Shown here in pieces: positions 11,882 through 12,087 of a stretch of 64,000 nucleotides of DNA. Origin of the DNA: Octopus sinensis. Lineage: Eukaryota. Position 1 is the first letter of the stretch, and each line of letters begins with the position of its first letter. The DNA lies in NCBI RefSeq assembly GCF_006345805.1, contig NC_043010.1:62186001-62250000 (forward strand). Direction: 5' to 3'. The position numbers and the translations under genes are program-made. Under the pieces are notes generated by a model. That model was not told the DNA's origin, ran no database searches, and saw only the letters and a program-made list of their open reading frames with translations.

Positions 11882-12087
11882 GTTTCTATGGGAACTGGTG
11901 TGTTACCATAGTAACTTTGGTACAGTAATTGGTATGTTACCATAGTAACTTTGGTGCAGTAAATAGTGTTACCATAGGAACTTTGGTGCAGTAACTGGTG
12001 TGTTACCATAGTAACTGGTCTTAACATGATAACTGGTCTGTTACCATGGTAACTTTGATACAGTAACCAGTGGGTTACCATTGCAAC
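11882..12087. promoter_or_regulatory. Tandem cluster of seven X-box (RFX-type) palindromes
   Basis: GTTWCY-AT-NGNAAC 14-mers start at 11882, 11902, 11936, 11968, 12002, 12040 and 12074. Confidence 0.55.

What the first reader, a model, noticed from the sequence alone, without database searches (positions are those of the whole stretch)
11882..12087. Seven RFX X-box-like palindromes arrayed just 3' of the ZNF-1 stop codon
Seen: GTTTCTATGGGAAC, GTTACCATAGTAAC (three times), GTTACCATAGGAAC, GTTACCATGGTAAC and GTTACCATTGCAAC, mostly 32-38 bp apart, with spacers more diverged than the palindromes. An eighth degenerate copy lies at 12020. Established: RFX factors bind the 14-bp X-box GTHNYY-AT-RRNAAC and control ciliary and sensory-neuron genes. 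Inference: a homotypic RFX enhancer built from a minisatellite, or a set of small 3' UTR hairpins.
Basis: partly seen in the sequence, partly recalled or inferred. Interest (0 to 1): 0.7.

Follow-up and report, generated by a model that had tools for sequence, protein, structure and literature searches.

The report
X-box palindrome minisatellite behind octopus ZNF
A short tandem repeat just downstream of an octopus zinc-finger gene carries six to seven textbook-quality RFX (X-box) binding sites, but it evolves like an ordinary decaying minisatellite, so an enhancer role remains unproven.

Summary
Window 11882-12107 is an imperfect minisatellite (34-bp period, 5.9 copies). Its core is a 14-bp palindrome. 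Six copies fit the strict X-box consensus, against 0.84 strand matches expected by chance in the whole window. Four copies are letter-identical to validated C. elegans X-boxes (osm-6, three times; dyf-3, once).

The window is Octopus sinensis chromosome DNA. The array lies 138-343 nt downstream of the stop codon of an 822-aa C2H2 zinc-finger ORF on the minus strand, probably inside its 3' UTR.

RFX competence at the sequence level is well supported. Selection for it is not:
- The array is two ~138-bp higher-order blocks. Between them boxes differ as much as spacers (23% vs 26%).
- One box has been replaced by (TG)n and two more are degenerate.
- Paralogous ZNF loci in three octopus species lack the array.
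- All validated worm X-boxes are promoter-proximal; this array is 3' of a gene.

The unit was not found elsewhere in about 157 kb of cephalopod DNA. The orthologous locus could not be retrieved, so the decisive cross-species test is open.

Side finding: non-coding tandem arrays of this X-box recur in dozens of eukaryote-like metagenome contigs, also without box-specific conservation.

Verdict: palindromic-core minisatellite, RFX-bindable, function unproven.

The parts
11882..12107 (.). Imperfect minisatellite. Units are built from A (14-bp X-box palindrome), B (14-bp degenerate copy of A, TTTGGTRCAGTAAC, keeping only the right half-site) and L (TGGTGT linker). Order: AL | ABL | ABL | ABL | AL | A'L | ABL | ABL.
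   Evidence: TRF period 34, 5.9 copies, score 226. The decomposition reproduces the sequence exactly. Repeat families D2 and D3.
11882..12019 (.). Higher-order block 1 (about 138 bp, five boxes). All five fit the X-box consensus.
   Evidence: The best ungapped self-shift of the region is 138 bp (58% identity), better than 34 bp (49%).
12020..12144 (.). Higher-order block 2, a decayed copy of block 1. One box is degenerate, one is a perfect palindrome, one is one base off consensus, one is replaced by (TG)n, and one is degenerate.
   Evidence: Alignment of the two blocks. Boxes differ 13/56, spacers 10/39.
11882..11895 (.). X-box GTTTCTATGGGAAC. Identical to the validated C. elegans dyf-3 X-box.
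11902..11915 (.). X-box GTTACCATAGTAAC. Identical to the validated C. elegans osm-6 X-box.
11936..11949 (.). X-box GTTACCATAGTAAC (same as osm-6).
11968..11981 (.). X-box GTTACCATAGGAAC. One mismatch from osm-6, dyf-5 and xbx-7.
12002..12015 (.). X-box GTTACCATAGTAAC (same as osm-6).
12020..12033 (.). Degenerate box CTTAACATGATAAC. Four mismatches from the array consensus; fails the X-box consensus.
12040..12053 (.). Perfect 14-bp palindrome GTTACCATGGTAAC. Best PWM score in the window (20.6 bits).
12074..12087 (.). Box GTTACCATTGCAAC. One position off the strict consensus; PWM 15.2 bits.
12112..12132 (.). (TG)n microsatellite occupying the place where block 2 should carry the counterpart of the box at 11968.
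12131..12144 (.). Last, degenerate box GTTACAGTCATAAC. It is the counterpart of the box at 12002 and has 4 mismatches.
12225..14693 (-). 822-aa C2H2 zinc-finger ORF ('ZNF-1') with stop codon TAA at 12225-12227. The array lies 138-343 nt downstream on this strand.
   Evidence: Pfam zf-C2H2 / zf-H2C2_2, 11 stretches. The exact product is on record in Octopus sinensis GCA_006345805.1, chromosome CM016872.1.

Best explanation
The feature is a locally generated minisatellite with a palindromic core, in the 3' flank (probably the 3' UTR) of a lineage-specific Octopus sinensis C2H2 zinc-finger gene.

How it most likely arose (inferred):
- A primordial unit of about 20 bp (14-bp palindrome GTTACCATRGTAAC plus TGGTGT) multiplied by slippage or unequal exchange.
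- This produced a 34-bp unit made of a box, a degenerate box and a linker.
- A block of about 138 bp then duplicated.
- Since then the copies have drifted. One block stays homogeneous through recent intra-block duplication. The other is decaying, and its TG-rich linker has grown into a (TG)n microsatellite.

Shown: the palindrome happens to be a high-quality RFX X-box, so RFX proteins could probably occupy it where the chromatin is open.

Inferred: I see no sign that the boxes are maintained by selection. The most likely status is a neutral, or at most opportunistic, binding-site array rather than a dedicated enhancer.
For: Tandem structure:
- Spacers are related by descent.
- The array has a higher-order 138-bp duplication.
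- Between the two blocks, boxes differ 13/56 (23%) and spacers 10/39 (26%), p=0.81.
- One box is replaced by (TG)n, and the boxes at 12020 and 12131 carry four mismatches each.
- Within-array box-versus-spacer conservation is not significant (p=0.08 and 0.55). The invariant block runs four bases past the box into the spacer (TTTG).

Context:
- No array lies 3' of the paralogous ZNFs in O. bimaculoides, O. sinensis, O. vulgaris or two Logan transcripts.
- There is no TIR and no second copy.
- Thirteen independent X-box-core arrays from metagenomes also show no box-specific conservation: 5.7% vs 7.2% mismatch, p=0.19.

Literature:
- All validated C. elegans X-boxes lie within 500 bp upstream of an ATG (PMC3245922).
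- In flies, motif presence alone does not predict RFX control (PMC2375033).
Against: - Six sites of validated quality in 206 bp is far above chance for the window.
- Four sites are letter-identical to functional worm X-boxes.
- 9 of the 12 differences from the box consensus across the eight listed boxes keep the X-box consensus. By my own calculation from the sequences, roughly 29-34% would do so by chance. This is post hoc, the events are not independent, and adding the degenerate box at 12131 gives 10 of 16.
- Three tandem X-boxes suffice for weak reporter expression in worms (bioRxiv 10.1101/2021.02.03.429678).
- Concerted evolution within arrays can hide selection.
- The orthologous locus was never seen.
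Confidence: 0.6

Rival explanations
1. The array is a functional homotypic RFX-dependent cis-regulatory module, either a 3' enhancer or silencer of the zinc-finger gene or the promoter of an unannotated transcript downstream on the minus strand. RFX dimers would occupy six or seven high-affinity X-boxes and couple expression to RFX-positive (ciliated sensory, neuronal or germline) cells.
For: - X-box quality equals validated sites.
- Block 1 keeps five of five boxes within consensus.
- The box at 11882 differs from the array consensus at four positions, all permitted by the consensus.
- Multimerised X-boxes drive expression in worms.
- Natural multi-X-box regulation is known: yeast RNR genes, human MAP1A and worm F25B4.2 (PMC3245922).
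- On the minus strand an ATG at 11798 followed by GTGAGT lies 84 nt beyond the last box. This is speculative.
Against: - Boxes are not conserved better than spacers between the blocks.
- Three of ten boxes are destroyed or degenerate.
- Paralogues lack the array.
- The position is atypical, and the neighbour is a zinc-finger gene rather than a ciliary gene.
- No gene-like ORF or Pfam hit lies downstream within about 11 kb.
- No expression or chromatin data are available.
Confidence: 0.22
2. The array is a fragment or internal tandem region of a dispersed repeat, either a transposable element or a satellite family common in octopus genomes. It would then have no locus-specific role.
For: - Octopus genomes are repeat-rich, and the window is crowded with SINE-like and satellite repeats.
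- X-box-core tandem arrays occur in many unrelated eukaryote-like contigs.
- One of these (L034, 35-bp period) aligns at 74% over 125 bp, though box periodicity and CA-rich spacers can explain that.
Against: - No second copy of the unit or its flanks was found in the 64-kb window plus 93 kb of other cephalopod loci.
- No terminal inverted repeats were found.
- No peptide relatives of the 75-aa ORF that runs through the array exist in a 5.8-billion-protein collection.
- Statistical power is low: only copy numbers above roughly 10^4 are excluded.
Confidence: 0.1
3. The array acts at the RNA level. As part of the ZNF 3' UTR, the palindromes pair with each other into 14-bp duplexes or small hairpins that affect stability, localisation or A-to-I editing.
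For: - The first canonical poly(A) signal on the minus strand is 1191 nt past the stop, so the array is probably transcribed within the UTR.
- The predicted fold pairs boxes of different units.
Against: - The fold energy is only marginally below shuffles: z = -2.05, with 4 of 200 shuffles at least as good.
- The duplexes are short.
- There is no Rfam match on the array.
- No covariation test was possible.
- No transcript contig containing the array or this ZNF was found.
Confidence: 0.05

Closest known systems
RFX / DAF-19 X-box promoter motif of ciliary genes (C. elegans, Drosophila, mammals)
   Same: It is a 14-bp imperfect inverted repeat fitting GTHNYY-AT-RRNAAC. Four copies fit the restricted fly consensus GYTRYY N1-3 RRHRAC. 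Four copies are identical to the validated osm-6 and dyf-3 boxes.
   Different: [quoted passage not shown] Here there are 6-7 copies in a tandem repeat 3' of a zinc-finger gene, with no evidence of conservation or of RFX dependence.
Transcription-factor-site-bearing minisatellites (VNTR regulators), e.g. human MNS16A with GATA-1 sites (PMC5438627)
   Same: A tandem repeat in which each unit carries a TF motif, so that copy number sets the number of sites.
   Different: Function and polymorphism have been demonstrated for MNS16A. Neither has been tested here.
Synthetic multimerised X-box reporters (3x klp-6 X-box; bioRxiv 10.1101/2021.02.03.429678)
   Same: Head-to-tail X-boxes with short spacers. 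The reporters show that such arrays can be sufficient for (weak) RFX-dependent expression.
   Different: Those reporters are artificial constructs placed upstream of a minimal promoter. This is a natural array in a 3' position.
Promoter-proximal double X-box seen here in termite-gut metagenome contigs (L014 and ten others)
   Same: The same 14-mer, GTTACCATGGTAAC, occurs in two copies.
   Different: The two boxes are invariant in six distinct haplotypes and sit about 135 bp upstream of an ATG-initiated exon. That is the classical arrangement, which the octopus array lacks.

Membership tests
RFX-regulated X-box element | 14-bp inverted-repeat motif fitting the X-box consensus or PWM | tested here: met
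   Six copies fit GTHNYYATRRNAAC. PWM scores are 17.9-20.6 bits against a validated median of 18.7. Four copies are identical to the osm-6 or dyf-3 boxes.
RFX-regulated X-box element | Position in the proximal promoter (within about 500 bp upstream of the target's start codon) | tested here: not met
   The array is 138-343 nt downstream of the ZNF stop codon. No gene-like ORF or Pfam hit was found in the 11 kb beyond it. An unannotated small first exon cannot be excluded.
RFX-regulated X-box element | Motif conserved at the orthologous position in related species | not testable with these tools
   No orthologous protein or locus could be retrieved. Only paralogous loci were obtained, and they lack the array.
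RFX-regulated X-box element | Boxes under stronger constraint than neighbouring sequence | tested here: not met
   Between the higher-order blocks, boxes differ 23% and spacers 26% (p=0.81). Within the array, p=0.08 and 0.55.
RFX-regulated X-box element | RFX binding and RFX-dependent expression of the target | not testable with these tools
   This needs EMSA, ChIP or CUT&RUN, and reporter assays.
Minisatellite / VNTR | Head-to-tail units of 10-100 bp related by descent, spacers included | tested here: met
   TRF period 34, 5.9 copies, 78% matches.
Minisatellite / VNTR | Higher-order structure and degenerate or decaying copies | tested here: met
   There is a 138-bp block duplication, decayed boxes at 12020 and 12131, and (TG)n in place of one box.
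Minisatellite / VNTR | Copy-number polymorphism among individuals | not testable with these tools
   Only one haplotype is available. L001 is identical to the window over the part compared, 11600-12230.
Dispersed repeat / transposable element | Further copies elsewhere in the genome | tested here: inconclusive
   No copy was found in 64 kb plus 93 kb of cephalopod DNA. That sample is far too small to exclude a family of up to about 10^4 copies.
Dispersed repeat / transposable element | Terminal inverted repeats or other element ends flanking the array | tested here: not met
   The only inverted repeats found are the boxes themselves.
Structured 3' UTR RNA element | Fold clearly more stable than shuffled sequence, or a match to a known RNA family | tested here: inconclusive
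   z = -2.05. There is no Rfam match on the array. Covariation is untestable without orthologues.

The most novel reading that the evidence does not exclude
X-box-core minisatellites may be a recurrent way for animal genomes to create RFX-responsive elements. A palindromic X-box is easily amplified by slippage, the resulting homotypic array recruits RFX cooperatively, and some arrays, possibly this one, are co-opted. Here that would tie a cephalopod-expanded zinc-finger gene, or an unannotated downstream transcript, to ciliated sensory or neuronal cell types. The dozens of unrelated non-coding X-box arrays in eukaryote-like metagenome contigs, against two in 596 Gb of prokaryotic genomes, would be the footprint of this process.
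Probability: 0.12. Interest if true: 0.6.

Novelty: new member of a known kind. Interest (0 to 1): 0.3.

Why it matters
If the array were a working RFX module, it would be a natural example of an enhancer born from a minisatellite. It would also give a handle on how the greatly expanded octopus C2H2 zinc-finger family is wired into sensory and neuronal programmes. As it stands, it mainly illustrates a caution for motif-based annotation. A tandem repeat can multiply one fortuitous, perfectly valid binding site into an impressive-looking 'homotypic cluster' without any sign of selection. The recurrence of X-box-core arrays in unrelated eukaryotic contigs deserves a controlled genome-wide test.

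Tried and rejected
1. Finding the orthologue, so as to align the 3' flank across species.
- The full-length protein search was swamped by zinc-finger paralogues; the best octopus hits were 46-53% identical.
- The search with the unique C-terminal tail found nothing.
- The exact protein is not in the protein collection.
- Hits from the representative-protein search cannot be passed to the contig look-up, so that route was not taken.

2. Exact look-ups of four small ORFs in and beside the array (75, 43, 46 and 95 aa), hoping for Logan or O. vulgaris contigs. None is on record.

3. Protein-level search with the 75-aa ORF that runs through the array, as a proxy for dispersed copies. It gave no hits.

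4. Transposable-element signatures. There are no TIRs and no second copy.

5. Known RNA families. Rfam gave nothing on the array. The sub-threshold mir-297/466-like hits nearby fall on TA/TG microsatellites and are low-complexity artefacts.

6. The idea that the metagenome X-box arrays are coding Tyr-Gly-Asn repeats. This was rejected for most of them. Only 4 of 50 loci have an open frame of 150 aa or more through the array.

7. A control scan with scrambled palindromes in the metagenome collection.

8. A literature search for the exact 14-mer, for X-box minisatellites and for RFX in cephalopods. No directly relevant paper was found.

9. Recollection only: I recall that the symmetric GTTACCATGGTAAC core was used in the RFX1 DNA-binding-domain crystal structure. 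I could not verify this and do not rely on it.

Full report
**What is there**

- Tandem Repeats Finder reports a 34-bp period, 5.9 copies, 78% matches and score 226 at 11893-12093.
- The strict nematode X-box consensus GTHNYYATRRNAAC matches six sites: 11882, 11902, 11936, 11968, 12002 and 12040. That is 12 strand matches. All lie in the array and none elsewhere in the 64 kb. Shuffles give a mean of 0.84, and 0 of 100 reached 12.
- The copy at 12074 (GTTACCATTGCAAC) misses the consensus at one position. The copy at 12020 (CTTAACATGATAAC) is degenerate.

I built a log-odds matrix from the 30 validated 14-bp C. elegans X-boxes in Table 1 of PMC3245922.
- The six best-scoring sites of the entire window are the six array boxes, at 17.9-20.6 bits. 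The validated set has a median of 18.7.
- The 12074 copy scores 15.2.
- Only one unrelated site, at 5504, is comparable.
- GTTACCATAGTAAC (three copies) is letter-identical to the validated osm-6 X-box. GTTTCTATGGGAAC is identical to the dyf-3 X-box.

At the level of sequence, these are bona fide X-boxes.

**Where it is**

- The only long ORF nearby is on the minus strand, at 12225-14693. It encodes 822 aa with 11 matched stretches each for Pfam zf-C2H2 and zf-H2C2_2.
- This exact product is on record on Octopus sinensis chromosome CM016872.1 (GCA_006345805.1) at about 62.2 Mb.
- The stop codon is TAA at 12225-12227. The array therefore lies 138-343 nt downstream on the coding strand, with a (TG)n run at 12112-12132 in between.
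- The first canonical poly(A) signal on that strand is 1191 nt beyond the stop. The array is therefore probably inside the 3' UTR. This is inferred, since no transcript data were available.

**Anatomy**

The array decomposes exactly into three elements:
- A: the 14-bp box.
- B: TTTGGTRCAGTAAC. It matches A at 9 of 14 positions, mostly in the right half-site, so it looks like a degenerate A.
- L: the linker TGGTGT.

The order is AL | ABL | ABL | ABL | AL | A'L | ABL | ABL. This suggests a primordial unit of about 20 bp (A+L) from which the 34-bp unit arose.

The strongest self-similarity is not at 34 bp (49% identity) but at 138 bp (58%). The array is thus two higher-order blocks, 11882-12019 and 12020 to about 12144. 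In block 2:
- the counterpart of the box at 11968 has been overwritten by GCGATATGTGTGTG, part of the (TG)n run;
- the counterpart of the box at 12002 is GTTACAGTCATAAC (12131-12144), with four mismatches;
- the first box (12020) is degenerate.

**Is the X-box protected?**

1. Within the five full-length units, differences from the consensus are 4/70 in boxes and 15/98 in B+L (Fisher p=0.08). With all eight units the counts are 12/112 and 16/114 (p=0.55). The invariant block also runs four bases past the box into the spacer (TTTG).
2. Between the two higher-order blocks each position has a true counterpart. Boxes differ at 13/56 positions (23%) and spacers at 10/39 (26%), p=0.81. One further box is lost entirely.
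3. I counted the differences from the box consensus across the eight listed boxes. 9 of 12 are compatible with the X-box consensus, against roughly 29-34% expected. This is my own calculation from the sequences. It is a post hoc count of non-independent events, and adding the degenerate box at 12131 gives 10 of 16. I treat it as a weak hint only.

Overall there is no convincing sign of purifying selection on the boxes.

**Context and relatives**

- The orthologous locus could not be obtained.
  - The full-length protein search returned only paralogues. The best octopus hits were P0022 (O. vulgaris/O. sinensis, 46% identity) and P0031 (O. bimaculoides, 52%).
  - The C-terminal-tail search found nothing.
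  - The exact protein is absent from the protein collection.
- I fetched the paralogues' loci in O. bimaculoides (L002), O. sinensis (L003) and O. vulgaris (L004), plus two Logan transcript contigs (L005, L006). None has an X-box array 3' of its stop. There is a single isolated consensus match in about 71 kb.
- BLASTN of 11600-12230 against the window and these loci found no second copy of the unit or its flanks. Only TG microsatellites matched.
- No terminal inverted repeats flank the array.
- The 75-aa ORF that happens to run through the array has no relatives among 5.8 billion proteins and no Pfam hit.
- ORFs in the 11 kb beyond the array have no Pfam hits.
- The RNA fold of the minus strand is only marginally better than shuffles (z = -2.05). 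Rfam has nothing on the array.

**How surprising is it?**

The copies descend from one unit, so the independent event is one 34-bp unit containing one X-box.
- From, about 6.6e-6 distinct sites per bp are expected. That gives about 2e-4 per unit.
- The window has 24 arrays of period 10 or more, of which only about half a dozen are not degenerate microsatellites.
- The chance per window is therefore on the order of 0.1-0.5%.
- In a genome of about 2.7 Gb (size from my own knowledge), tens of such arrays are expected by chance.

**An unexpected side result**

I scanned the metagenome collection for two GTTACCATRGTAAC boxes 4-24 nt apart. It returned 50 loci. By my rough estimate, about 1e-3 random co-occurrences would be expected.
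- After removing duplicates, these are about 30 unrelated contigs, mostly AT-rich and eukaryote-like.
- Each contains a tandem array of 2-13 X-boxes. Periods include 15, 16, 18, 20-24, 30-31, 35-37 and 47 bp, and the spacers are unrelated between loci.
- Most arrays are not inside long ORFs.
- The same scan found only two hits in 596 Gb of bacterial and archaeal genomes and none in viral contigs.
- I excluded the pair of units that triggered each hit. In 13 independent arrays the box mismatch rate was then 5.7% and the spacer rate 7.2% (p=0.19). As in the octopus, boxes are not specially protected.

Whether the X-box is over-represented among minisatellite cores therefore remains open.

One group of hits provides a contrast. 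Eleven termite-gut contigs (six distinct sequences) share a double GTTACCATGGTAAC that is invariant and lies about 135 bp upstream of an ATG followed by a splice donor. That is the classical promoter arrangement.

**Comparison with what is known**

[quoted passage not shown] Eight worm genes carry two or more (PMC3245922).
- In flies the mere presence of an X-box is not predictive. Conservation between species is what identifies targets (PMC2375033).
- Three tandem X-boxes can drive weak expression in worms (bioRxiv 10.1101/2021.02.03.429678).
- TF-site-bearing minisatellites that regulate genes are known, for example MNS16A (PMC5438627).
- RFX proteins and their motif are conserved across animals (established knowledge, not tested here). 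Octopus RFX binding to these boxes is therefore plausible.

**Verdict**

The feature is a minisatellite made of genuine X-box sequences. The evidence available favours a neutrally evolving, partly decaying repeat that could be bound by RFX, rather than a selected homotypic enhancer.
- My confidences are 0.6 for the neutral-minisatellite reading, about 0.22 for a functional RFX module, 0.1 for a dispersed-repeat fragment and 0.05 for an RNA-level role.
- The decisive test is the orthologous flank in O. vulgaris, O. bimaculoides and beyond, together with a genome-wide census with control palindromes. It could not be run here.

Noticed in passing
L007-L056 (metagenome contigs), e.g. L010:1162-1459, L017:1640-2195, L023:1-260, L024:883-1367: Non-coding tandem arrays whose only shared element is the X-box GTTACCATRGTAAC recur in about 30 unrelated eukaryote-like contigs. 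Periods range from 15 to 47 bp and arrays have 2-13 copies. The same pattern gave 2 hits in 596 Gb of prokaryotic genomes and 0 in viral contigs. Boxes are not better conserved than spacers (5.7% vs 7.2%). Enrichment over other palindromes could not be controlled.
   Followed up: partly
L014:2814-2852 and L015, L018, L021, L022, L026, L028, L037, L038, L039, L045: Termite-gut metagenome contigs (probably host DNA) share an invariant double X-box: GTTACCATGGTAAC, 11 nt, GTTACCATGGTAAC. It lies about 135 bp upstream of ATGGCAGAAGTTTTGACTGAAGAAGAG|GTATT, a start codon plus a splice donor. It looks like a classical RFX-regulated promoter. The gene was not identified.
   Followed up: partly
L058:4395-4436 (Candidatus Hadarchaeota MAG); the same locus in L035:778-819 and L044:3302-3343: An archaeal locus carries two direct copies of GCGTTACTATGGTAAC 28 bp apart, at the start of a ~400-aa open frame. 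It is an operator-like repeat that happens to match the X-box. L057 (a Bacillota MAG) has an 18-bp repeat, AAAGTTACCATAGTAACA, in 2.5 copies.
   Followed up: no
window 12225-14693 (-), residues ~745-785; P0031; P0082: The ZNF shares a conserved C-terminal motif outside the fingers (SWM..YL..P..WENNYLWSRSF.(I/M)PP....WPN) with an O. bimaculoides ZFP2-like protein and a Logan transcript protein. This points to an octopod ZNF subfamily with an uncharacterised C-terminal module.
   Followed up: partly
window 12225-14693 (-): This intact 822-aa ZNF ORF is on record as a called gene in the O. sinensis assembly. It is absent from the 15-billion-protein collection, and no annotated orthologue or assembled transcript was found. 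It may be unannotated or weakly expressed.
   Followed up: partly
window 50439-53855 (-): A second, larger C2H2 zinc-finger ORF (1138 aa from a GTG start as listed) has long poly-Q tracts and repeated 'SGKQYSHS'-type N-terminal units. No X-box array lies near it.
   Followed up: no
window 19579-19769, 25942-26100, 58839-58972: Tandem repeats of 66, 62 and 25 bp share the core GTGCCACTGGCAC / CGTAAAAAGCACC in both orientations. They look like pieces of one dispersed (SINE-like) octopus element.
   Followed up: no
window 28749-29528: A 253-bp satellite-like repeat with 3.1 copies and 93% matches.
   Followed up: no
window 5504-5517: An isolated high-scoring X-box-like site, GTCTCCTTGACAAC (17.4 bits on the worm-derived matrix). 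It is the only site outside the array in that score range.
   Followed up: no
window 11761-11798 (-): On the minus strand, 84 nt beyond the last box, an ATG opens a 12-codon frame that runs into a consensus splice donor (GTGAGT). It could be a first mini-exon that would make the array promoter-proximal, or it could be pure chance. No transcript evidence is available.
   Followed up: no
window 10640-11360 and 15100-15360: Sub-threshold Rfam hits to mir-297, mir-466 and mir-3149 fall on TA/TG microsatellites. They are low-complexity artefacts, not miRNA genes.
   Followed up: yes
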